A stretch of 64,000 nucleotides of DNA, from positions 5,828,001 through 5,892,000 of the forward strand of contig OU015566.1 in the NCBI GenBank assembly GCA_907165135.1. Direction: 5' to 3'. Below the pieces are notes generated by a model, which saw nothing but the letters and a program-made list of their open reading frames with translations, did not search any database and was not told the DNA's origin. This document shows positions 10,892 through 61,939 of the stretch, in pieces. Made by a program: the position numbers and the translations under genes. Origin of the DNA: Oikopleura dioica. Taxonomy: Eukaryota > Animalia > Chordata. Position 1 is the first letter of the stretch; the number at the start of each line of letters is the position of its first letter.

Positions 10892-13800
10892 ATGAAGCTC
10901 CGAGAGAATGCGTTATTTCAAATTGCAATAACAGCATCATCAGTAAAGTCTCAAGTGCTTACGAAAGTAACCGATCCTCAATGGATCGGAACACAAGTAG
11001 ATCCTCCGTCAGACGATGTCAATGTTGGCAATCAAGCAGATATATCTGATTTTTATCTCAAACCATCCGATGTTAGTACCCTTACAGATAAATTCGAAGC
11101 TTTTTGAAAGGCATGGGAAATGTTTTATCCATTTTCTAGGCAGCAGCTCTCGCCAAAGCTGGTTTCAATCCGGACAGCGCTCGGGTTATAACTCCTGAAG
11201 ATGGCTACATTGAGCCAGACGACAATGCTGTGACACCGAGAGGCTTGTCAAACTCGAACAAATGGCGGCCTCTTACTCCAGGCGGGCCAGTGACTGTACC
11301 GTATTATGTTCACAGCACCGCGAGTTCTTTCCAAACTCTCATTCAGGTAATCTCACATCGATCGATTTAGAAAATGAGTTTATTGTTTTCAAGACTTCTA
11401 TGGAATCTTTGGCCAATGACCTCGCCTGTTTTTCGATGCCTGAGGTCACCGACGAAGAAATCGACTCTACGACCTACGAAAATGGAATTGTCTTTGTTAG
11501 GCACGAAAACCGTTGCTACTCTGCTCTTGGTCTCGCTCCTGGGGCGCATTTCGGAACACAGGGAGTCTCTAGCGTTGCTGCTTTTGGCGTTCCTGCTACT
11601 TGGCAAGTCATCGCCCTTGCCGATATTTGCACTCCAGATAATCCATCAACGATTCAGCACGAAATGCTTCATGCACTAGGAGTTCTGCACGAGCATCAAC
11701 GACCTGATAGAGATACGTACCTGCTCTTTAATCCTTCAGCTTCGAGTAACCCCAGTGCATATGATCTGATTGCGTCCGAGCAATGGTTCGACATGGGAAG
11801 TCCTTTGGAAGTCGAGTCCGTCATGACTTATTGCTCCTTCTGTGGCGCGATCGGCGATGCTCCAGTAATGACCATCAGAGCCACAGGGGAAACTTTTAGT
11901 GACGGGTACAGAATCACAACAACAGATGCGAAGCAGCTTCAACACGCCTACTGCGAACTTGATCCAATTAATTTCCCTGACTTCACTTACAAACAAGCGA
12001 TCAGTTGCACCTCCACTGACAAGCTCGGCTTCAACCGGGAAATTTTCACGGATCGTCTATGCGACAATGTCGTTGACTGCGGCGGAGGCGAGGATGAAAC
12101 CGGAGAGCTGAACCGGTGCAATCCAAAAACTCCCAACACGAGCAACGGCTGCTGTGGATCATTGTACTTTCCCTACCAAGGTGAGTGTATCGCCAATGGT
12201 GAAGTCTACAACAACAAGGAGGTCTGGGAATGCAGCAATTCTGTAATTGCGAATTATAACGGAGCCTGGTACGTATTCACTGCGGATTCGTGGCCTCTTA
12301 ACGGAGCCTACTGGTTCTCGGACTCCATTGTTTCGGACTCAGTTTGTCCTCCAATCAACGAAGCTTGGAACAATGGCAATATCGCTACCTGCGTCTGGGC
12401 AGGTGCCGATGACTCAGACGAATGCGATCCAAATCCTTGTGATCCGAACGCTACTTGTACTGATTTGTACAGAGACTACAGCTGCGAATGCAATGAACTC
12501 TACACTGGAGACGGCGAGACCTGCACATTCATCCCCGAAGTCGACGAATGCGCTGATGGCACTCATGTGTGCGATGGTAACGCCGTTTGTACCGATGCAA
12601 GAATCGACTACACTTGTGAATGTGCTGATGGATTTAAAGATAGTCACCAGGTTTTCGACTATATATTCATGAGTTTATGTATTAAAATCGACTGAGACCT
12701 TTTTAATCATCATTTATTGAAGGGCGATGCTCCAGGTCAATCCTGTGTTCCAGATGATACTTGCTGTGAAGTCATTGAGGGTAAGCTTGAACAACTGTTA
12801 GACAAAAATATTCTAAATAGTTGCCATCTGGTCTGGTACGATTCAATGCATAAAAAACGACACTGAGACACAATATGATAGACCAACATGGCAGTGTGAT
12901 GGTGACGGTTATTATATCGGACATCATCCACTCTTGAGCCCTCCGTTTGCTTTGTTTTTGGATCCTACTACATACTATGGAGGTTACATGTTCGCGACGA
13001 CTCAAGATGGATATTGTATCGACACAGAACATCCGATAAGTCCAAGGAATCGGTTTCTAAAATACAATATGACCAAAAATTAGATAATTTTAAAACCGAT
13101 CAAAGTGCAACTTGCAAATTATACCCAACAACTGAACCTTCATCTACTGAGACTCCGACTGAACCACCCACCGAGCCACCAACGGAGCCGCCAACTGAAC
13201 GTCCAACTGAAGCACCAACTGAAACAACACCTGAACCAACAAGCGAACCAACTACTCGACAAACAACTGAACCAACTACTGAGCCAACTACTGAAGCAAC
13301 TACTGAACCAACAACGGTATCAACAACTATACCTACAACTGAAGCAACTACTGGAGCAACTACTGAGCCTTCTACTGAGTCACCAACAGCAGCAGAAATC
13401 GATTGTCCAAATATTTCTTGGGAACCAAACTCGTCAAATACGGCTTGCATTCCTGTTGATTTAACTGTTCAGTAAGTTATCTAAAAATATTCGGGACCAA
13501 AGAGAATAACGGTAATTAATAAAGGTGCGACTCTACCAATATCACCATCTCCGCCCACGTAGACCACCTCTACGCCAATCTGCCTCCATCTCTCTACAAC
13601 AACGTCCGACTCAACATCGGAACATGCACGGGCAACGATGCTCCCGACGCAAACGGCTGGATGACAGAAACTTTCGAGTTAGGAACATGCGGTGGCGACG
13701 CTACTCAATCCGGCGAAATCTTCATTTCTTGGATGGGACAAGGTCCTCCCGAAGTCATCCAGCAGGACGGCGTTTACATTTCCTCGATTCTTGGCTTCAA

Positions 13801-52144: not shown

Positions 52145-54218
52145 CTATTTTTTGGAATGCTTCTTGATTCGCTTTTTTAGCTCAGAGGGGAACTTGTCGA
52201 AGCATTTTTTGCTAAAAAAGGGAATCAGTGGGTTTTAAAATTTGGTGGATTCTTGTTTGCTTTTTGGACGTTTTTGTGAGGCCCGAATATTTCGCTTACC
52301 AAAGCGGTTTCATGTCAAACTCGACGAATTTCTGCTTCGGACTGAGTCGATCATCGCAGCCTGTGCACCGGAAACAACAAGAGCAGTACTTTTTCTCCAG
52401 CGCCGAAATCACTTCGTCCTAAACGGAAGTTTAAAACAGGGGAAAACAAAGGGAGTGCACCTTTATGGGGATATTGCAAGAAAAGCAGACTTCTCCAAAC
52501 TGAATGTTGTAGTGCTTCTCACAGTAAGGCATGTTATCAGGTCCGAGGAAGTACTTAGAGTGCGAGAAAGGACGCTCGCAGGATGAGCAGACGAAATGCT
52601 CAGGATGCCACTGCTTCCCACAGGCATTTACGCATCTCCCCTCTAAAAAATAACATTAATTGCTGATCAACCCAAAGGATGCATAAAAACGTTAAATTAA
52701 TTCGGCATTGGAGGGAGTTCCCTCGCTGTTTATATCAACGTGACCTCTAAAATATCGACGTGAGTGGTCAATTTTCAGCTGATTTGCCAACAATTAAATT
52801 TAATTTTGGGATAAACGGCCCATTTTTCACGAGGAGAGAAAAGTTTATTTTTATCCAAACCAAACTGGTCAGTTTCCAAATCATAATTACATCTATCTCT
52901 TGTTTCCGTCCAGCCGCGTCTAATAACCAAAATATGCCAACAATTATTACCCAAGACGCGTTTTTAAAAACACGAAGCCATAATAAAACATACCAACCGG
53001 GCCCACGTTAGCGAGGGAAAATAGTTCAGCCCGAAAATTCTCGTCAAAGTTACGCTGCTTCTGTAAAATGGCTTTTTTCGAGAAAAAATTATTTATCAAA
53101 ACCAACTCAAAAACCTGAGTCAGGAAAAAGCCGCGGCTTTTAATTAAAGCTTTCCAATGACCCTGACTCAGGTTTCTTGAAAGTCGAGCCCAGTAATCTA
53201 CCGCTTTGAACATACCAACCGGTCGTCGACAAGCTGCGCAAATCGGAATGCCCATCTTATCGTGACAGGGAAGGCAGTACAGTCGCCCTCCGATGTCTCT
53301 GCCAGTATGATCCATGACGCAGGCGCAGTTGGCACAGTTGAAGTGGTACGGATGATAGGGATCGCCCTTCCAGCGAAGCGGCATGTCTTCCACTACGTTG
53401 AAGCACTTTTGGCAAATTGGCTTTCCTTCGGCTTTCGCTTTTTCTTCGTTGAAACAGGGTCGGCAGAAGAGCTTCTTGTTGTACTGCGCCAACGGGGTGC
53501 CCAAAGCAGATCCGCAAGAGTCTTGATTTTCGCAACAGAAACATTCGAGGCACCATTCTGCGTTCAGGGCGCTTTAAAAATGGCTTTCAAAAAGGGATTT
53601 TTCAAATAAATGAGCACGGCCATCAAAATTGTCGTGCTGTTTCCAGCAATTAATTATGGATCAAGATAAGTTTATACCGGACGTTCTCTACAGCCAGTTT
53701 TTGATAAACTAAGAAAAATAAGATGAAACTTCTAAAGAAGCAATTCTATAGCGCTATTATTGGAGTCGCTAAGGGAAAACTGAAAAATGAAAACAGATCA
53801 CTTTGGAAAGCCGAGCCTTAAAACCTCGCCCTCGACAAAAGTGTTGCATTTTCTGCAAATGGGCGCGTAAAGAACTTTGAAATCGTCCTCGCAGTACTTT
53901 TTTCCTTCAAACTGAAAGATGTTGTCCTCATCGGTAAATCTCCTGAAACACTGTTCGCAGCAAAAACAGTCTTTGTGAAACGATTGCTGGTCGTAGTTGG
54001 TGAAGTCTTGACCGTCGCCGATTCGTTGCTCGCAGTGAGAGCACTTGTCCGCTTTGTACGGGCGAAATCCTCCGGCCACGCTGCGGCTCTGAATGAAATC
54101 GGTTCACTTGGAAATATGAAGGAGGGACTTTGAGCCTCTAAAAGGGGTGATGGTAAGAGTCAGGGTCGAGATCAGAAAACCGAGGTTTTACCTTTGGAAC
54201 TGGAATTCCTTGTACCAT
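52145..54218 (-). CDS. LIMS1: PINCH / LIM and senescent cell antigen-like protein (five LIM domains)
   Basis: LYAPIC, WKGDPYHPYHFNC, DKMGIPICAACRRP, KQWHPEHFVC and [25 protein letters not shown]. The start codon is tentative. Confidence 0.9.
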
Positions 54219-54375
54219 CCGATGTCCGTTTTTTCAACTCTTCTTTTTCTCTCTATTTCTGAAAAAATGTTGATTGATTAATTAAGTTTAGTTGAATTCA
54301 AATAGCTTCGCTGCGCAGAGACTCTGAAACAGTGGAAAGGGAAAGCTCTTGGAGGGCAATTAAATCAGCCGAATC

Positions 54376-56815
54376 CTAATCCGATTCATCCAAATTCTTT
54401 TGAAATAGTTGAAATTGTTCTTTTGTCGTTTCCGATTTCAGAAGGCGTCTGACTCTTTCTTCGTTTTTTACGCTTCTGCGCGCTAAAAGAAACGCGACCT
54501 CCAGCTGGGCGGAAGAAACTCGCCCTTGCCGATTTGTCAATATTTGATTTTCGAATAATTCAAAGACGCCCGACAGCTGCTTCTCGCTCAGAGCCGTAAA
54601 TCTTATCAGCGCAGAAAGAATTGCCGAGTCCTGGAGGTGGAGCAATTTCGGAAAGAAGAGCAACGATTGGGATGGAAACTTGCGGATAATTTTGCAGAGG
54701 ATTGTCGAATCGCCTTTTTTGGAGTTGGAAATGGGAATAAAAAGGTTGAAAATAGGCTCAAAAGATGGATTATCCTCTAATTGAAATCAACAACGACAAA
54801 AACGAAAATTCAAACAAGAAGAACCCTTTCTCAAAAATTGAGCTAGAAGCGGTTTTTTTTTTCTTTCGGAAAATTTTTGACTCGTAATTTTTGTGAAGCC
54901 GACTTTTCGCGCATTTTTATGTAACTCTAACCGTACCCTTCACCCAAGCGCTAACCTTAACCTGAGTCCCAGACCATGTCTGTTTTAGACTTTACTTTCG
55001 TATTTTTTTAAAGATAAAAACCACAATTGAATAAAGAAGATATCCGACTGAGGCAGTCGAAATGACAAAATGCGGTTTTCCGCGGCTATAAATTTGAAAC
55101 CAAAAGAAAAATTCCAGCGCCTTATCTCCTTATCGCTGAATAAAAATAAAAATTAGCTCGGAACTCCGGCCTTGATGTCTTTGAAGATGAAATTTGAAGA
55201 TCTCTTCATCCAGATCATCTTCTTCTAAAAGCAAGAGAATGGAGAAATAGGCGATTGTGAGGAGATTCTTTGAAGTTTTCGCTTTTCGGAAACAGTCGTA
55301 AATCTGAGGAAGCATTGACGATTCCGGACGTTCTCCGTAGAATTCCAGGTAGTCCAGGAGAGCCAGCGAGATTTTTCGCCATTTGTGAGACGGCCCATTT
55401 CCCTGATTGAAATAATTTATCAAAATTGTTACCAAAAAGTGTGTTCGTCGTATTGTTGTACCTTTGATTTCTCTAACTCAGCACTTAAAATGTCGATGAA
55501 GATTTTCTGGGCTTTTTGGTGAAGAAGAGGCTCTCGCCGCAGGGCAAATTTAATGAAGTTAATTGCTGCTTGTAAGTCCTCCGACTGGATGATTAATTCT
55601 GCCACTTTGTTCGCCCATTTCCCAGATTGCAAATGCACCAGAGCTGAAAATGAAAGCTACAGTAAGTTGCAGTTAGCTGGGCTCGGCAATCTGACCTGAG
55701 TAAAACCCTGAGTCAGGCCCCTGAGTACTGAGTACACAGGCCCTGACCTGTGTGCCTCAGTAAAATCGAGGCCCGAGAAAAAAAACCCTGACCCTGACCC
55801 TGACCTGAGTTAAAAGACAGGCCTGAGTTGCTCACACAGGGCCTGAGTAAGCGAAAAAAACACAAAAAAAGGGTCAATTTGCAACGTCAAGGGGGTCAAA
55901 ATACAGTGATTTTCCGTCTTATGGGCGATTTTGTGATTAAAAGTTATATGTTATCTGCGAAAAATGAAATTGTTAAGATTTTGATGTGTGGAAAAACCCT
56001 GAGTTTTGGCCTGAGTCAGGCACCTGACCCTGACCTGAGTTCCTGAGTCTGAGCAGGCCTGACTGAGTACCCTGAGTACCTGACTGAGTGAGAAACACTG
56101 ACCTGAGTTCCTGAGTAAATATCAAGAAAAAATTTTCTAACCCTGACCCTGACCCTGACCCTGTACTCAGGTTGCCGAGCCCAGGCAGTTAGTCTTACGC
56201 CGTTTAACACGACTGTAAGAATTAAACAACACGGAGGCTTTCTTTTACCGCAAAACATTTAATACAGTGGTGTTTTATTCTTGCATTACAAGGCTTGTAA
56301 TGCAAGCCCCAATAATTGGGCAGAAATATATCTGTATCTTACCAGACGTTCCCGCACGTAAATTTCCATCTTTGATTGTCGCTAAAATCGATCTTTCAAC
56401 TGTTTCGTATTCGACGATTTCTTCCGAAGTTTGAAAAATAGTAACGAGAGTGAAGAGCGCGATGTTCTGAATCGCCCAGTTTTGATGAGAAAGATCCTTG
56501 AGAACTTGATTGAAAATAATCATCGATGCGTCGCCCCGGATATTGCGAAGAATAAGGAGGTAGCTTCGCTTGGTTCTCATTTTTGCGCTTTCATTTTCGC
56601 GGAAAATCTTTGGCTTTATCAGAACCGATCCTTAAAAACTTGACTCGAATATTACTAGAAGTAATCAAAGAAGCGAGCGTTGGAACCAAATCATCCCTTT
56701 TCTTCTGCTGTCTGAGCAACGTCTGGAGAACAGGAATTACCTCCCCGTAGTTATCAGATAAAATCGCCTTCTCCGCCGCCTTTTGAACGGTTTCTTTCGG
56801 ATACAAATGCTCCAT
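54376..56815 (-). CDS. Helical-repeat protein with an adaptin-N-like start (multi-exon)
   Basis: LITSSNIRVK...KRSYLLI...IIFNQVLKDLSHQNWAIQNIALFTL resembles the first repeats of AP/COPI large subunits. Later exons are Leu-rich and helical. The identity is unresolved. Confidence 0.5.
55677..56184. mobile_element. 508-bp CTGGGCTCGGCAA-family element with CCTGAGT/CCTGACC arrays
   Basis: TIR CTGGGCTCGGCAATCTG / CAGGTTGCCGAGCCCAG. Perfect 8-bp TSD GCAGTTAG at 55669-55676 and 56185-56192. Confidence 0.9.
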
Positions 56816-57541
56816 TAATGATTTTTCAGAATTCGAGCGCAGATTTCTTCTCCGAATTTCTTATCTTCTTTGCTGCCAGAATATGGCTGGTTTTTGGTAG
56901 AATAGGAACTGATAAAGTCGAGTTTTAGAAGACGCGAGATTTCGGATTCTGGGCCGTTGTAAGCGTAGCAACTGCACTTTTCTGACTCGCCAAGATCTGA
57001 AGACTATTTTTCGGACTTAAATTTCAAGTTTACTCAAAAAGCGAAAAAAATACAGTTTAACTTAGCATGAGGCTCCTGCCATGAGCCTCCGTTAAATCCA
57101 TCAAACTGATACGCTGATCCCTTTTTAGAGCACACTACTAAAAGACCTTATCTAAATCCTATCTTTCCGCGCGTTGTTTCTACTCCGCCGCGCGTAATAG
57201 CGAAGAAAAACAGTGAAAAATGTGAACTTACGATTAACAACGTCGATGCTAATCCTTTTGTACTCGCCCTCTTGATCTAGTCCCTCGAATTCATCCAAGA
57301 CCAGCGCTCCCTTCTCGCTTACTTCAACAATTTCTCCCTCGACGCACTCGCCCTGACCCTTGCGATCAACCAAAATAGGCACGTGATCTGTCTGCGGATC
57401 CGTAACAAGTGGAAATCCGTCCTCTGTTCTTGCCGGCCTAGGCGCCTCTTGAATATGCTTGAAGCGAAGGAGATAGTCAATAAGCCAACGGTTCGGTTCG
57501 CCTGATTTTAAAGTTCCGTAAATGAACAGTTTTTGACTCAT
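56815..57541 (-). CDS. GGACT: Gamma-glutamylamine cyclotransferase-like protein
   Basis: LFIYGTLKSGEPN, FPLV, VEGEIVEV and LDEFEG motifs. Exon 1 is 57541-57232 and exon 2 is 56996-56815, joined in phase 1 at GT-AG. Confidence 0.85.
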
Positions 57542-57819
57542 CTCATTCTGAATTCGCCATTTTTAAAATTGATTGATTGCAAAAGAAAGAAAACAATCCA
57601 GAAGAAAATTATTATCGCCAAGGAGGATGATAATTATTCGATTTACTTTTATTTTTCATTTTTATTGGTAGATTTTTTTTTGTACTGAAAGAAAGAAACT
57701 TCACTCAGGACTGTTTTTGAAAATTGAGTCCATTTAGTACTAACAAGTCTTCGTCTTCTGGCAGTAATGGTCAAGTTCGACGACAGCTTATCTAAATCAC
57801 GAGTTAGAGGGGGGAGCAC

Positions 57820-58429
57820 GTAAGTTAAGGCGTTTTTGCGATTTGCGTCCCTTAAGGCTTTGCGTCAGTTAAGGCGTTTGCGTCAGTTAAGGCGCTGAAA
57901 ATGACTAGTTGAATTCTGATATCAAGTAGGGTGTGCTAGATTTCCTCGATTGTAACTTTACTTAAAATTCTTCTTATTTCATTCTCAAGTTTAATTTCAA
58001 ATATGAAAACAGATCTGAAAAATTTAGTAGTGTCGAATTATAATTTTACTAAAAATTGATTTATTCTATCACGAAAAACTTCAAATTTAATGATAAACCT
58101 GCCGTTCAGCTTGACATGCTTATTATAATTTCAGTAATCGAGTATAAAATTATTTTTTATGAAAATTTTAAACCTAACACTAACCCTAGGAATTGGGAAA
58201 GACAGGTTTTTTTTAAGACTGCTCCTCTACTGTGGAGCGGTTTTGAGTACCTTAGAGTCGAGATATTTTAATTATCTCTTTTGCAGTAAGAAGGTTAATC
58301 AAGAAAGTCTAGCAGACCCTTCTCGATATCAGAATCCAACTAGTCATTTTCAGCGCCTTAACTGACGCAAACGCCTTAACTGATGCAACGCCTTAAAGGA
58401 CGCAAATCGCAAAAACGCCTTAACTTACG
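57820..58429. mobile_element. About 610-bp element with about 110-bp TIRs containing TTAAGGCG repeats
   Basis: GTAAGTTAAGGCGTTTTTGCGATTTGCGTCC...GATATC is mirrored at 58320-58429. Confidence 0.75.
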
Positions 58430-58439
58430 ATTCGTATTA

Positions 58440-59981
58440 TTACCTGTAGTCGTCGTATCTAGGTGGGGATCGAGAGCGACGGGGAGAACGTGATCTCGAT
58501 CTTCTGGAATAGCCACGATCGTCGTCGCGAGGTTGCCGTTGAAATCCTCGTCCTTTTCCTTGATACGGCTGGTGAGCTCGTCCGCCGCCGAACTTTGATG
58601 GAACACGGTCTTTACACGGATAAACAACTGAATAACAGTATAATGATATCCATTTCAATCATTGCAGATCCATTCCTGGGTCGAAAGAAGCTCCAGGTGG
58701 TCCTCTTCCGCCACCTCGTCCGCCACGGAATCCACCTCCGCCGCGTCCGCCTCTGAATCCACCTCGATCGCCGCCAAAGTCTCTTCCGCCTCCTCTGTCT
58801 CCGAAATCTCGTCCACCGCCGCGGTCAAAATCGCGTCCGCCACCTCTTCTGTCGCCGCCAAAGTCGCGTCCTCCTCCACGATTTCCGAAATCTCTTCCTC
58901 CTCGGTCGCCAAAGTCTCGTCCACCGCCTCTTCCGCTGCCTCGGTAACCACCACGATCACCGCCGCCGCCTCGACCGCCTCGGAAACCGCCGTCTCTATC
59001 ACCGCCTCCGCGGTAGCCGCCATCGCTTCTTCTAAAATATAAATTTCTCATTTCTGCCTTACAGTAATCTTGACTCTAACCTGTCATCTCGACCGTCTCG
59101 ACCATCTCGATCGCGTCTGTCTCCGCCTCTTCTGTCATCTCTACAAGAAAAAAATTAAGCAATTTTACCAAAGAAAGACAAATGATTACCCTCTTCGATC
59201 TTCTCGGTCAAATCCTCCGCGGCCACGTCCACCTCTGAATCCGCCACGATCGCCGCCAAAGTCTCTGACACCGCCTCGATCTCCAAAATCTCGACCGCCG
59301 CCGCTTCTTCGATCTCCTCCGTCGCGATCGCCTCCTCTTCTGAAGTCATCCCTGCTTCTGCCGCGGAATGAATCGTCGCGGCCTCGACCTCCGTACCCGC
59401 CTCCTCGACGATCTTCGTAGCCACCTCCGCCGCCACCGCCGTAGCTGTTTCTGTTTCCAGCGCCGCGATCAACGCGATCAGAGTAGCGATTCTCCTCTCG
59501 GCGACCACTTTAATTTCACTATATTTTAACACTTGGTTTATTTAACTACCGATAGTCATCTTTGGGTGGACCAGACGGAGGAGCTCCGCCTCCGTAAGAA
59601 TTGAGCACGGGCGGTGGTGCTCCATAAACTGGTGGTGGAGCGCCGTACGAGCCGCTTGACTCTGGTGGGGGTGGTGGAGGCGCCGCATACATTCCTCCCA
59701 TCATTTGTGAAGCAAGTTCTGGAGGCAGGTGGCCAGGTGGAGGACCTGGTGGTGGTGGAGCATTTGCCAGCTCTACGGCGCGGTTTTTAATTCAAATTCA
59801 AGAAAAGAAATCTTATCGAAGGAATAAAGGAGGTGATATGAAACTCATTTGATTTTCTATTCATTGAATACGGTAAATGACTCGATTTTTTATCTCGTCA
59901 ATACGAAGTTGCTTTAACAGCAAGAACAGTTATCAAACCTGGTGGTACTGGTGGAGCACCGTAATTCGGATATGAACTCAT
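58440..59981 (-). CDS. Low-complexity Pro-rich / RGG / RS protein with no folded domain seen
   Basis: MSSYPNYGAPPVPP start, poly-Pro exon, GGRDFGDR repeats, FRGGRGG and RSRSRSPRRSRSPP. Short GT-AG introns lie between these segments. The 3' end is uncertain. Confidence 0.7.
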
Positions 59982-60975: not shown

Positions 60976-61070
60976 TCAGAAAGGTTAGCTCGCTCTGAAT
61001 ATTTTCCTCTCGCCAAAATGGACTTTTTCTGACAAGACAAATTTAGACCACGAACAGGGGCAGGAAGTGT

Positions 61071-61939
61071 TTAGTTTCCGCTGACGGAGGTCTTGGATTT
61101 GGAGAGGGAGGATCGTCTTCGCTCCTTCTTCTTTTCCTTGGCTTCCTTCTGTCGCTGGTTGAGGAGCTTTCGGTATTCAGCCTCGGCCTTCTGGGCGGCC
61201 TGGTATCGGTCTCGCTAAAAACCAAAGTGTTAGGAGGGGAGAAGTGGCGAAAAATGAGTGTTACCTTGTCTGCCAATCGCTTTCGCTTGCGCTGGATTCG
61301 GTTGGGAGTGATGAGTCGCTGGACCTTGGGGGCAACCTTCTTGGCCTTCTTGCCCTCCTTCTCGATGGTTCGGTGGACGACGTACTTGGTGACGGGGTCG
61401 GACTTGTCCAAACCGAAGAGCTTTCGGATGTTGTTGGCTCGCTTGGGACCAAGTCGTCGGGGGATGGTCTAAAACACGAATAAGCTTGAGAATGATGAGA
61501 TAAGCTTTTACCTTGTCGGTGAGACCCTCGATCTCGCCCTCACCCTTCTTGACGATCATGAGGTTGAGGATGGAGAGGTTGTGATTGACGATGCAACCTC
61601 GGACAGACTTTCGCTTTCGCTCACCAGTGCGGCTTGGGTTGTAGCAGGACTGGCCCTTGGAGAGGAGGAGCTTAACTCGACCGACAGAGGCGACACCTGA
61701 ATAAAAGTTACCGACTGATCATTTGAAAGCGTTGTTTACTTACCCTGTTTCATGGGGAAGCCCTGCTTGTCGTTACCGCCAGTGATTCGGACAACGTATC
61801 CGGCCCACTCGGGTCCGAGGTGATCAGCGCTGACTTCCTGGGCCATGCGCTTGTCGTAGAAGTGCTTCAACTTCTGCTCGTCATCGACCTCAAGGACCTT
61901 TTGGCACCCGGTCGCGGGGTTGGCGATGTTAAGTTTCAT
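61071..61939 (-). CDS. RPS6: 40S ribosomal protein S6
   Basis: [53 protein letters not shown] and the C-terminal [12 protein letters not shown]. Three short introns. Confidence 0.97.

What the first reader, a model, noticed from the sequence alone, without database searches (positions are those of the whole stretch)
56800..56830. TAATG stop/start overlap couples GGACT to the next gene in an operon-like run
Seen: after splicing (exon 1 ends in phase 1; exon 2 is 182 nt), the GGACT stop TAA falls at 56817-56815, and its last A is the A of the ATG that opens the adaptin-N-like ORF (MEHLYPK...). There is no intercistronic DNA and no pyrimidine-rich AG just upstream for SL trans-splicing. Established: UAAUG overlaps mediate translational coupling in bacteria and termination-reinitiation in some eukaryotic viruses and retroelements, whereas Oikopleura operons are normally resolved by trans-splicing. 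Inference: this may be a dicistronic animal mRNA translated by reinitiation, or a trans-splice site buried in the upstream CDS.
Basis: partly seen in the sequence, partly recalled or inferred. Interest (0 to 1): 0.8.

Follow-up and report, generated by a model that had tools for sequence, protein, structure and literature searches.

The report
Conserved two-gene mRNA in Oikopleura
In the small marine chordate Oikopleura dioica the stop codon of the GGACT gene shares a base with the start codon of the next gene. Transcripts of related lineages carry both genes on one mature mRNA, so the second protein is probably made by ribosomes that scan past or restart after the first gene, not by the usual trans-splicing.

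Summary
On the minus strand, GGACT (exon 1 57541-57232, exon 2 56996-56815) ends in TAA at 56817-56815. The last A of that stop opens the ATG (56815-56813) of a 385-aa adaptin-like helical-repeat gene. The spliced GGACT model equals the public Okinawa protein CAG5104807.1.

The motif alone is not special, because 8 comparable ORF junctions occur in this window. The comparative evidence is what makes it notable:
- In six other contig sets the stop lies at most 2 nt from the same ATG, although neutral sites are about 50% diverged or saturated.
- Five intron-free RNA contigs from five datasets run through the junction.
- One of them (L015, a distant species) starts with the spliced leader, holds both complete ORFs and ends in poly(A). 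None shows a leader on the second gene.
- GGACT has only one internal ATG in any frame in every lineage, against 5-7 expected.
- A tiny upstream ORF overlaps the GGACT start.
- No conserved RNA structure precedes the junction.

My reading is an unresolved dicistronic mRNA whose second ORF is reached by scanning-bypass, possibly helped by stop-start reinitiation. No RNA of the window's own lineage could be laid, and translation is untested. The scan noted two similar pairs elsewhere in this genome (TAF13-PIGX, AROS-DUS4L).

The parts
57548..57549 (-). AG acceptor where the 40-nt spliced leader joins the GGACT mRNA (ttcag|aATGAGATGAGT)
   Evidence: RNA contigs L007 and L015 begin with the last 21-22 nt of the leader, joined at the homologous site. 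The leader is encoded by SL RNA genes in this genome: 53 copies of the 21-mer, followed by a GT donor.
57538..57546 (-). Mini uORF ATG-AGA-TGA, starting 1 nt after the leader junction; its stop overlaps the GGACT ATG (ATGA)
   Evidence: The uATG is conserved in all lineages, including the distant L015. There it is a 4-codon uORF ending in TGATG over the GGACT start. In L011 the stop is lost and the uORF runs 12 codons.
57232..57541 (-). GGACT exon 1 (310 nt, phase 1)
   Evidence: Pfam PF06094, E 6e-15. The model is identical to CAG5104807.1.
57277..57294 (-). The only internal ATG of the GGACT CDS (out of frame); it opens a 5-codon ORF
   Evidence: It sits at the same position in L012, L011 and L014. 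L015 has a single different one (3 codons).
56997..57231 (-). GGACT intron (GT..AG, 235 nt)
   Evidence: It is removed in the RNA contigs of sister lineages.
56815..56996 (-). GGACT exon 2 (182 nt) ending in TAA; contains no ATG
56813..56817 (-). TAATG: the GGACT stop and the start of the second cistron share one A
   Evidence: TAATG is also present in L010, L012, L013, L014 and L016. L015 has TAGTAATG and L007/L009/L011 have TAAAAATG.
56631..56815 (-). Second cistron (adaptin-like alpha-solenoid, 385 aa) exon 1
   Evidence: The N-terminus M-x-x-L-[YF]-P is kept in orthologues and in distant homologues. The join to exon 2 is seen in the spliced contigs L007, L013, L014 and L016.
56564..56630 (-). 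Intron 1 of the second gene, non-canonical GA..AG, 67 nt
   Evidence: The boundaries were set by homology to spliced L007 against genomic L009.
56343..56563 (-). Second cistron exon 2 (weak Adaptin_N match)
   Evidence: (E 3e-4, below the Pfam cut-off).
55462..55643 (-). Second cistron exon 3
   Evidence: matches P0028.
55171..55402 (-). Second cistron exon 4, followed by a GC..AG intron (55170-54714)
   Evidence: Reads of the sister lineage link this exon to exon 5 (joint 54603/55170).
54376..54713 (-). Second cistron exon 5, ending at TAG 54378-54376
   Evidence: The whole 5-exon model is an intact 385-aa ORF.
54216..54260 (-). Next gene (LIM-domain protein): predicted leader acceptor ttttcag|aaat (AG 54260-54259) and ATG 54218-54216
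   Evidence: In run X4 of the sister lineage, 9 reads carry ..AACAG joined to this gene's 5' UTR where the genome (L009) reads ..TTAAG. This fits ordinary SL trans-splicing of the third gene.

Best explanation
GGACT and the adaptin-like gene are expressed from one mature, spliced-leader-capped, polyadenylated dicistronic mRNA that is not resolved by trans-splicing. The next gene downstream (LIM) is resolved in the ordinary way.

Inferred mechanism: the second ORF is reached by small ribosomal subunits that do not start at the GGACT AUG. They either leak past it, or they translate the 2-codon uORF that covers it and then resume scanning. They can travel the roughly 490 nt because GGACT has been purged of AUGs; the single one left opens a 5-codon ORF. 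The stop-start overlap keeps the two ORFs abutted and may also let some ribosomes that finish GGACT restart at the adjacent AUG.

Shown: the gene models, the conservation of the junction, the RNA contigs of relatives, the AUG depletion and the uORF. Inferred: that the same mRNA exists in the window's lineage, and that the second ORF is translated from it.
For: 1. Junction conservation. The stop lies -1 or +2 nt from the same ATG in the window, L010, L012, L013/L014/L016, L007/L009/L011 and L015. GGACT's last codons differ in each (KNH, KNN, KNS, E, DQ, and a roughly 30-aa extension). Four-fold-site identity is about 0.5 to the L011/L014 groups and 0.24-0.41 to L015. Ordinary O. dioica intercistronic spacers are 23-33 nt.
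2. RNA contigs. Five intron-free contigs from five datasets cross the junction. L007 starts with the leader. L015 runs leader + GGACT + 385-aa ORF + 27 nt + poly(A).
3. AUG depletion. There is exactly one internal ATG in any frame and no internal Met in the GGACT CDS of the window, L012, L011, L014 and L015. Expected counts are 4.7-7.6, with P 0.0005-0.011. The second ORF, used as control, shows observed equal to expected. GGACT sits at about the 5th percentile of ATG density among 62 long open stretches of the window.
4. The uAUG overlapping the GGACT start is conserved.
5. The ATG at 56815 is the true start. The N-terminus is conserved to distant homologues and is used in CBY33363.1.
6. In the window, no AG lies within 31 nt upstream of the ATG.
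7. The same sequence pattern holds at TAF13-PIGX in this genome: a 14-nt overlap and no internal ATG.
Against: No RNA of the window's own lineage was seen; runs X1 and X4-X6 are only 90-95% alike in conserved exons and left the junction uncovered. Contigs are assemblies, and a contig across two genes does not prove a single molecule. A minor leader-joined isoform would be lost in assembly. Split by exon, the AUG depletion is only modestly significant (exon-1 part P 0.025-0.25, exon-2 part P 0.04-0.26). An mRNA that starts at or is trans-spliced to the exon-2 acceptor would therefore explain part of it. Pure leaky scanning does not itself require the stop to stay within 2 nt of the ATG. The GGACT AUG has a purine at -3, which is not an obviously weak context. 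No translation data were available.
Confidence: 0.5

Rival explanations
1. Same dicistronic mRNA, but the second ORF is made mainly by termination-reinitiation. Ribosomes finishing GGACT at UAA stay on the mRNA and restart at the overlapping AUG.
For: The TAATG string is kept in the window group, the L013/14/16 group and, behind a new TAG, in L015. The stop is never more than 2 nt from the ATG, despite indels and a roughly 30-aa tail extension in L015. Viral UAAUG/AUGA systems work this way with stop and start within 20 nt. In yeast, cis-element-independent reinitiation falls off as the spacer grows. The uORF/GGACT boundary is also a stop-start overlap.
Against: Reinitiation after a long ORF normally needs a tethering element. 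Here there is no stable or covarying structure in the 110 nt upstream (z-scores 0.66, 0.76, -0.15, 1.26; 1 compensatory pair of 19) and no UGGGA motif. This route does not explain the AUG depletion of the whole first ORF. The other two pairs noted in this genome overlap by 14 and 8 nt, where restarting would need backward movement.
Confidence: 0.2
2. The second gene has its own monocistronic mRNA. It could be made by leader trans-splicing at an AG inside GGACT (for example AAG|A at 56848-56847, or the exon-2 acceptor cag|a at 56998-56997) or from an internal promoter in the 235-nt GGACT intron. The dicistronic RNA would then be only the GGACT mRNA or a precursor, with mutually exclusive processing as in operons that lack intercistronic DNA.
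For: O. dioica adds the leader at unpaired AG, usually AG|A, and uses cryptic internal promoters in operons. Candidate AG|A sites exist in all lineages, and an AG lies 2-5 nt before the ATG in L009/L011, L012 and L015. Exon 2 is ATG-free and could serve as a leader. Mutually exclusive processing is described for Ciona and for C. elegans SL1-type operons. Assemblies can drop a minor leader-joined branch.
Against: None of the five RNA contigs breaks or branches at any such site, while leader and poly(A) ends were assembled where they exist. No AG near the ATG is conserved, and the window and L010 have none within 31 nt; that AG lies in a purine-rich context unlike the proven acceptors. This rival leaves the depletion of ATGs in exon 1 unexplained (combined window + L015 P about 0.015). 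It also leaves the conserved uAUG and the constant stop-start adjacency unexplained.
Confidence: 0.25
3. Chance juxtaposition or a gene-model artefact: the real start of the second gene is further downstream (as in the public models g1559 and CBY11289), or GGACT ends in another exon.
For: Eight comparable ORF junctions occur by chance in the window. Two public annotations start the second gene downstream.
Against: Those two public N-termini are out of frame with conserved coding sequence. Spliced RNA contigs and the third public model CBY33363.1 use the MEHLYPK start, and distant homologues begin at the same residue. The GGACT last exon and stop agree with the public protein and with the RNA contigs.
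Confidence: 0.05

Closest known systems
Conserved nuclear bicistronic mRNAs of green algae translated by leaky scanning (PMC11892635)
   Same: One capped, polyadenylated mRNA with two conserved ORFs. There is a very short or no inter-ORF spacer, marked AUG depletion upstream of ORF 2 with normal AUG content in ORF 2, and a short 5' leader.
   Different: This is an animal (chordate) that otherwise resolves polycistrons by SL trans-splicing. The ORFs share a base. A conserved mini-uORF covers the ORF-1 start. A weak ORF-1 start context is not shown here. No reporter or ribosome data exist.
Viral UAAUG/AUGA termination-reinitiation (calicivirus VP2, influenza B M1/BM2) with a TURBS element (PMC10275272, PMC3035654)
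   Same: The same pentanucleotide, a long upstream ORF, the downstream ORF out of frame, and stop and start within a few nt.
   Different: No structured or conserved upstream element was detected and there is no UGGGA. Complementarity to 18S rRNA could not be tested. The AUG depletion of ORF 1 is not a feature of those systems. This is a cellular gene pair, not a virus.
Drosophila dicistronic mRNAs translated directly (stoned, Adh-Adhr; reviewed in PMC2776167)
   Same: Animal nuclear genes with a mature dicistronic mRNA. The second ORF is thought to be reached by reinitiation, leaky scanning or internal entry.
   Different: Drosophila has no SL trans-splicing, and those pairs have spacers. Here the pair sits in an SL operon context with an overlapping stop and start.
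SL-resolved operons of Oikopleura and Ciona, and C. elegans SL1-type operons without intercistronic DNA (PMC1488885, PMC7986045)
   Same: Same-strand, tightly packed genes. The first gene receives the leader, and the third gene of this cluster seems to be resolved by the leader.
   Different: In those operons every downstream cistron receives the leader at an AG in non-coding sequence, and the CDSs do not overlap. Oikopleura spacers are 23-33 nt. Here no leader was seen on cistron 2 and there is no spacer.

Membership tests
SL-resolved Oikopleura operon gene pair | Downstream cistron receives the 40-nt leader at an unpaired AG (usually AG|A) upstream of its ATG | tested here: inconclusive
   No leader appears at cistron 2 in five RNA contigs of related lineages. 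No AG lies within 31 nt upstream in the window. No RNA of the window's own lineage could be laid, and assemblies can lose minor isoforms.
SL-resolved Oikopleura operon gene pair | Short non-coding intercistronic spacer (23-33 nt typical) | tested here: not met
   The spacer is -1 nt in the window and -1 or +2 nt in all relatives.
Leaky-scanning bicistronic mRNA (green-alga type) | Both ORFs on one mature mRNA | tested here: met
   Met in related lineages only. L015 carries leader + both ORFs + poly(A). L007, L013, L014 and L016 are spliced and cross the junction. It is inferred for the window.
Leaky-scanning bicistronic mRNA (green-alga type) | AUG depletion upstream of ORF 2, none in ORF 2 | tested here: met
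   One internal ATG against 4.7-7.6 expected in five lineages, P 0.0005-0.011. ORF 2 shows observed equal to expected. By exon the signal is weaker.
Leaky-scanning bicistronic mRNA (green-alga type) | Weak start context at ORF 1; ORF 2 output inversely related to ORF 1 start strength | not testable with these tools
   The GGACT AUG has G at -3 and A at +4. No species-specific consensus was derived and no reporter data exist.
TURBS-dependent termination-reinitiation | Stop and restart codon within about 20 nt, out of frame | tested here: met
   TAATG; ORF 2 is in the +2 frame.
TURBS-dependent termination-reinitiation | Structured upstream element required for tethering | tested here: not met
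   Fold z-scores are 0.66, 0.76, -0.15 and 1.26. The consensus fold is -8.7 kcal/mol with 1 compensatory pair of 19.
TURBS-dependent termination-reinitiation | Sequence complementary to the 18S rRNA loop (ES9/h26) | not tested
   The search for the genome's 18S rRNA failed twice. The literal UGGGA motif is absent from the last 110 nt of GGACT.
GGACT / AIG2-like (PF06094) | Pfam match above the curated cut-off | tested here: met
   56.3 bits against a cut-off of 22.8.
Adaptin_N (PF01602) | Pfam match above the curated cut-off | tested here: not met
   18-20 bits against a cut-off of 37. Language-model neighbours are generic HEAT/adaptin fragments. A profile search of 1.8 billion proteins found only 15 hits; the closest are Oikopleura sequences, the others carry no taxon label. 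I call it adaptin-like, not a member.

The most novel reading that the evidence does not exclude
Oikopleura keeps a class of operon pairs deliberately unresolved. These would be mature dicistronic mRNAs in which a leader-proximal mini-uORF and an AUG-free first ORF split ribosomes between two proteins. At UAAUG, ribosomes finishing a long cellular ORF would restart without any TURBS-like tether. That would be a cellular, chordate example of reinitiation after a long ORF, and a second route beside trans-splicing for expressing operon genes.
Probability: 0.2. Interest if true: 0.8.

Novelty: new member of a known kind. Interest (0 to 1): 0.6.

Why it matters
Oikopleura is the textbook chordate in which polycistronic transcripts are resolved by spliced-leader trans-splicing. 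A gene pair that stays on one mRNA across deeply diverged appendicularian lineages would show that operon genes there have a second, translational route of expression that sets the ratio of two proteins. The pair has an AUG-free first ORF, a uORF over its start and a shared stop/start base.

It also has a practical consequence. Two of the three public gene models cut off the first two exons of the second gene, at a locus with an overlapping start and a non-canonical GA..AG first intron, so such pairs are likely under-annotated.

Ribosome profiling and SL-CAGE data already exist for this species (PMC6883708, PMC6389100), so the question can be tested directly. Together with TAF13-PIGX and AROS-DUS4L, the case suggests a class rather than an oddity.

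Tried and rejected
1. Direct RNA evidence. The single look-up of sequencing runs and read-laying runs gave only runs of a divergent O. dioica lineage. All reads were 90-99% alike and only partly on the window, and there was no coverage of the junction. The calls were useful only for the LIM gene's leader and for linking exons 4 and 5.
2. Scan of JGI contigs for the conserved N-terminal coding pattern. It returned only L007 and L009, and no separate leader-joined 5' end of gene 2.
3. TURBS-like element. Folding and the alignment fold gave nothing. The 18S rRNA fetch from the genome failed twice, so rRNA complementarity stayed untested.
4. Synonymous-site constraint at the GGACT 3' end. There is no excess overall (0.47 against 0.46). 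A run of 8 of 9 invariant codons 45-75 nt before the stop is not significant after multiple testing.
5. Fusion by readthrough or frameshift. Rejected: ORF 2 is in the +2 frame in all lineages and no conserved slippery site exists.
6. Conserved AG acceptor near the ATG. Not conserved.
7. Ganot 2004 and Danks 2015 are not held in the library. Their statements are cited second-hand.
The joined proteins were never sent to a search tool; they were joined only inside local scripts for counting.
Full report
**Observation**

I read the region on the minus strand.
- GGACT exon 1 is 57541-57232 (310 nt, phase 1).
- A GT..AG intron of 235 nt follows.
- Exon 2 is 56996-56815 (182 nt) and ends in TAA at 56817-56815.
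- The last A of that stop is the A of the ATG at 56815-56813, which opens MEHLYPKETVQK.

Exon 1 is a clear PF06094 GGACT match (E 6e-15). The joined 163-aa product is identical to the public protein CAG5104807.1, gene g1560 of the Okinawa assembly OKI2018_I69. The window is G000 C4:5,828,001-5,892,000 of a 64.3-Mb, 19-contig genome.

There is no AG in the 31 nt before the ATG. The nearest one (56848-56847) lies in a purine-rich part of the GGACT coding sequence.

The motif by itself is not remarkable. The window holds 8 places where an ORF of at least 50 codons stops within 2 nt of an ATG opening another ORF of at least 50 codons.

**The second gene and its start**

By homology to spliced contigs of relatives I built a five-exon model: 56815-56631, 56563-56343, 55643-55462, 55402-55171 and 54713-54376. 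It gives an intact 385-aa ORF. Introns 1 and 4 are non-canonical (GA..AG and GC..AG).

Pfam gives only sub-threshold Adaptin_N matches. Language-model neighbours are generic HEAT/adaptin fragments. A profile search of 1.8 billion representatives found only 15 hits; the closest are Oikopleura sequences and the more distant ones carry no taxon label. I therefore call it an adaptin-like helical-repeat protein of unknown role.

The start is secure.
- Orthologues and the more distant homologues all begin M-x-x-L-[YF]-P at the same residue.
- The Bergen model CBY33363.1 uses this start.
- Two other public models (g1559 and CBY11289) begin downstream, with N-termini that are out of frame with conserved sequence.

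**RNA evidence**

Reads were 90-99% alike, matched only in conserved exons, and none lay on the junction.

I therefore looked for the two proteins, exon by exon, in public assemblies. These gave genomic contigs L009-L012 and five intron-free, hence RNA-derived, contigs from five datasets: L007, L013, L014, L016 and L015. All five run from GGACT straight into the second ORF, with the introns of both genes removed.
- L007 begins with the last 21 nt of the spliced leader, joined at the site homologous to ttcag|a at 57548.
- L014 still carries the unspliced outron.
- L015 comes from a distant species (about 50% protein identity) and is a complete molecule: 22 nt of leader, a 15-nt 5' UTR, GGACT (191 aa), the 385-aa ORF, 27 nt of 3' UTR and a poly(A) run.

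I confirmed that the leader is real. The 21-mer occurs 53 times in this genome (0 for the reversed control), inside units that read as the 40-nt leader followed by a GT donor.

No contig shows a leader on the second cistron or breaks at the junction. By contrast, reads of run X4 end in ..AACAG joined to the 5' UTR of the third gene (LIM), where the genome reads ..TTAAG. That fits ordinary trans-splicing of that gene.

Contigs are assemblies and cannot prove single molecules, and a minor leader-joined isoform could be lost. This evidence is good but not decisive, and it is indirect for the window's own lineage.

**Conservation of the junction**

| Contigs | Last GGACT codons | Junction |
|---|---|---|
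| window, L010, L012 | CAT, AAT, AGT | TAATG |
| L013, L014, L016 | GAA | TAATG |
| L007, L009, L011 | CAG | TAA-AA-ATG |
| L015 | roughly 30-residue tail | TAG-TA-ATG, so TAATG survives behind a new stop |

The stop is therefore always -1 or +2 nt from the ATG, and the second ORF is always in the +2 frame.

Four-fold-site identity is 0.84 to L012, about 0.5 to the L011 and L014 groups, and 0.24-0.41 to L015. Neutral positions have therefore turned over while the adjacency stayed. Ordinary Oikopleura operon spacers are 23-33 nt.

**Signals in the first cistron**

The GGACT CDS has no internal Met and exactly one ATG in any frame in each of the window, L012, L011, L014 and L015.
- In the O. dioica-like lineages that ATG is at position 247 and opens 5 codons.
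- In L015 it is at position 22 and opens 3 codons.
- Synonymous-codon permutation and codon shuffling expect 4.7-7.6, with P between 0.0005 and 0.011.
- The second ORF, used as control, has the expected number.
- Among 62 long open stretches of the window, GGACT lies at about the 5th percentile of ATG density.

Split by exon the signal is spread over both parts and is individually modest.

A uATG lies one base after the leader junction in every lineage. In the window it opens ATG-AGA-TGA, whose stop overlaps the GGACT ATG. In L015 a 4-codon uORF ends in TGATG on the GGACT start. In L011 the stop is lost and the uORF runs 12 codons across the start.

The 110 nt before the junction show no unusual stability (z-scores 0.66, 0.76, -0.15, 1.26) and no covariation.

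**Mechanism**

The best-supported reading is an unresolved dicistronic mRNA.

AUG depletion upstream of ORF 2, with normal AUG content in ORF 2, is the hallmark used to argue for leaky scanning in the conserved bicistronic mRNAs of green algae. The mini-uORF suggests how ribosomes are split. Those that start at the uAUG read through the GGACT AUG, terminate at once, and resume scanning along an AUG-free stretch to the second start.

The constant stop-start adjacency is not required by that model. It is the classical signature of termination-reinitiation. Yeast work shows reinitiation that is independent of cis-elements and weakens as the spacer lengthens. A contribution from restarting ribosomes is therefore plausible, although no TURBS-like element is present.

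The main rival is a separate mRNA for the second gene, made at a buried AG, at the exon-2 acceptor or from a promoter in the intron. It would explain an ATG-free exon 2. It would not explain the depletion in exon 1, the uAUG or the unbroken contigs. I put it at about 0.25.

**Comparison with known systems and novelty**

Mature dicistronic mRNAs are known in animals (Drosophila stoned and Adh-Adhr) and are common in green algae. UAAUG coupling is known in viruses. This is therefore a new member of a known kind.

What is unusual is the setting. The organism resolves its operons by trans-splicing, this pair is left unresolved across deep divergence, and the next gene in line is resolved.

A full-text search found no paper describing dicistronic translation in Oikopleura.

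Earlier notes of this scan describe two similar pairs in the same genome. I re-derived the TAF13 model at L021 and confirmed a 14-nt overlap and no internal ATG. The depletion there is not significant alone (0 observed against 1.7 expected). I did not check the AROS-DUS4L note.

**Limits**

- No RNA of the Okinawa lineage was seen, and no translation data were available.
- The 18S complementarity test failed technically.
- Contigs of the distant homologues could not be fetched.
- Joined spliced proteins were not sent to any search tool.

Noticed in passing
window 54298-54378 (minus strand): The second gene ends at TAG 54378-54376, but the frame stays open for 25 more codons to TGA 54300-54298. 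That tail (DSADLIALQELSLSTV...) is homologous to the real C-terminus of the Bergen-type protein (SSSDFIALEKLSINTVPS). It could be a recent nonsense change, a sequencing error or readthrough in the Okinawa lineage.
   Followed up: partly
window 56564-56630 and 54714-55170 (minus strand): Introns 1 and 4 of the second gene are non-canonical (GA..AG, 67 nt; GC..AG, 457 nt). Public models g1559 (P0028) and CBY11289 (P0025) start downstream with out-of-frame N-termini, and CBY33363 (P0049) skips 17 residues at intron 1. The annotation was probably misled by the overlap and by this intron.
   Followed up: partly
window about 55680-56190 (minus strand, inside the 699-nt intron 2): A MITE-like insertion with 13-bp terminal inverted repeats (CTGGGCTCGGCAA / TTGCCGAGCCCAG), flanked by an 8-bp direct duplication CTAACTGC. 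It is filled with CTCAGG/TCAGGG repeats.
   Followed up: no
L007:88-104: RNA contig L007 carries a 14-nt palindromic insertion that breaks the GGACT frame. Genomic L011 of the same lineage group lacks it. It is probably an assembly or cDNA hairpin artefact.
   Followed up: partly
window 54216-54260 (minus strand); L009:1760-1800: The third gene (LIM-domain protein) appears to be SL trans-spliced in the sister lineage. Nine X4 reads read ..AACAG + 5' UTR where the genome has ..TTAAG. Only 5 leader letters are visible in the tool's consensus.
   Followed up: partly
window 13084-13461 (+), 58647-59039 (+), 61046-61718 (-): Other long stop-free stretches with zero or one ATG in any frame. They could be further AUG-depleted upstream cistrons, low-complexity coding sequence or non-coding sequence.
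   Followed up: no
window 57830-57900 (minus strand): Three tandem copies of a roughly 20-nt unit (gccttaactgacgcaaa-like), about 300 nt upstream of the GGACT leader acceptor.
   Followed up: no
L021:1238-1756 (G000 C1:7,827,950-7,828,468): TAF13 (three exons, 112 aa) has no ATG in any frame before the start of the next ORF, which overlaps its last 14 nt. Pfam did not recognise the downstream exon.
   Followed up: partly
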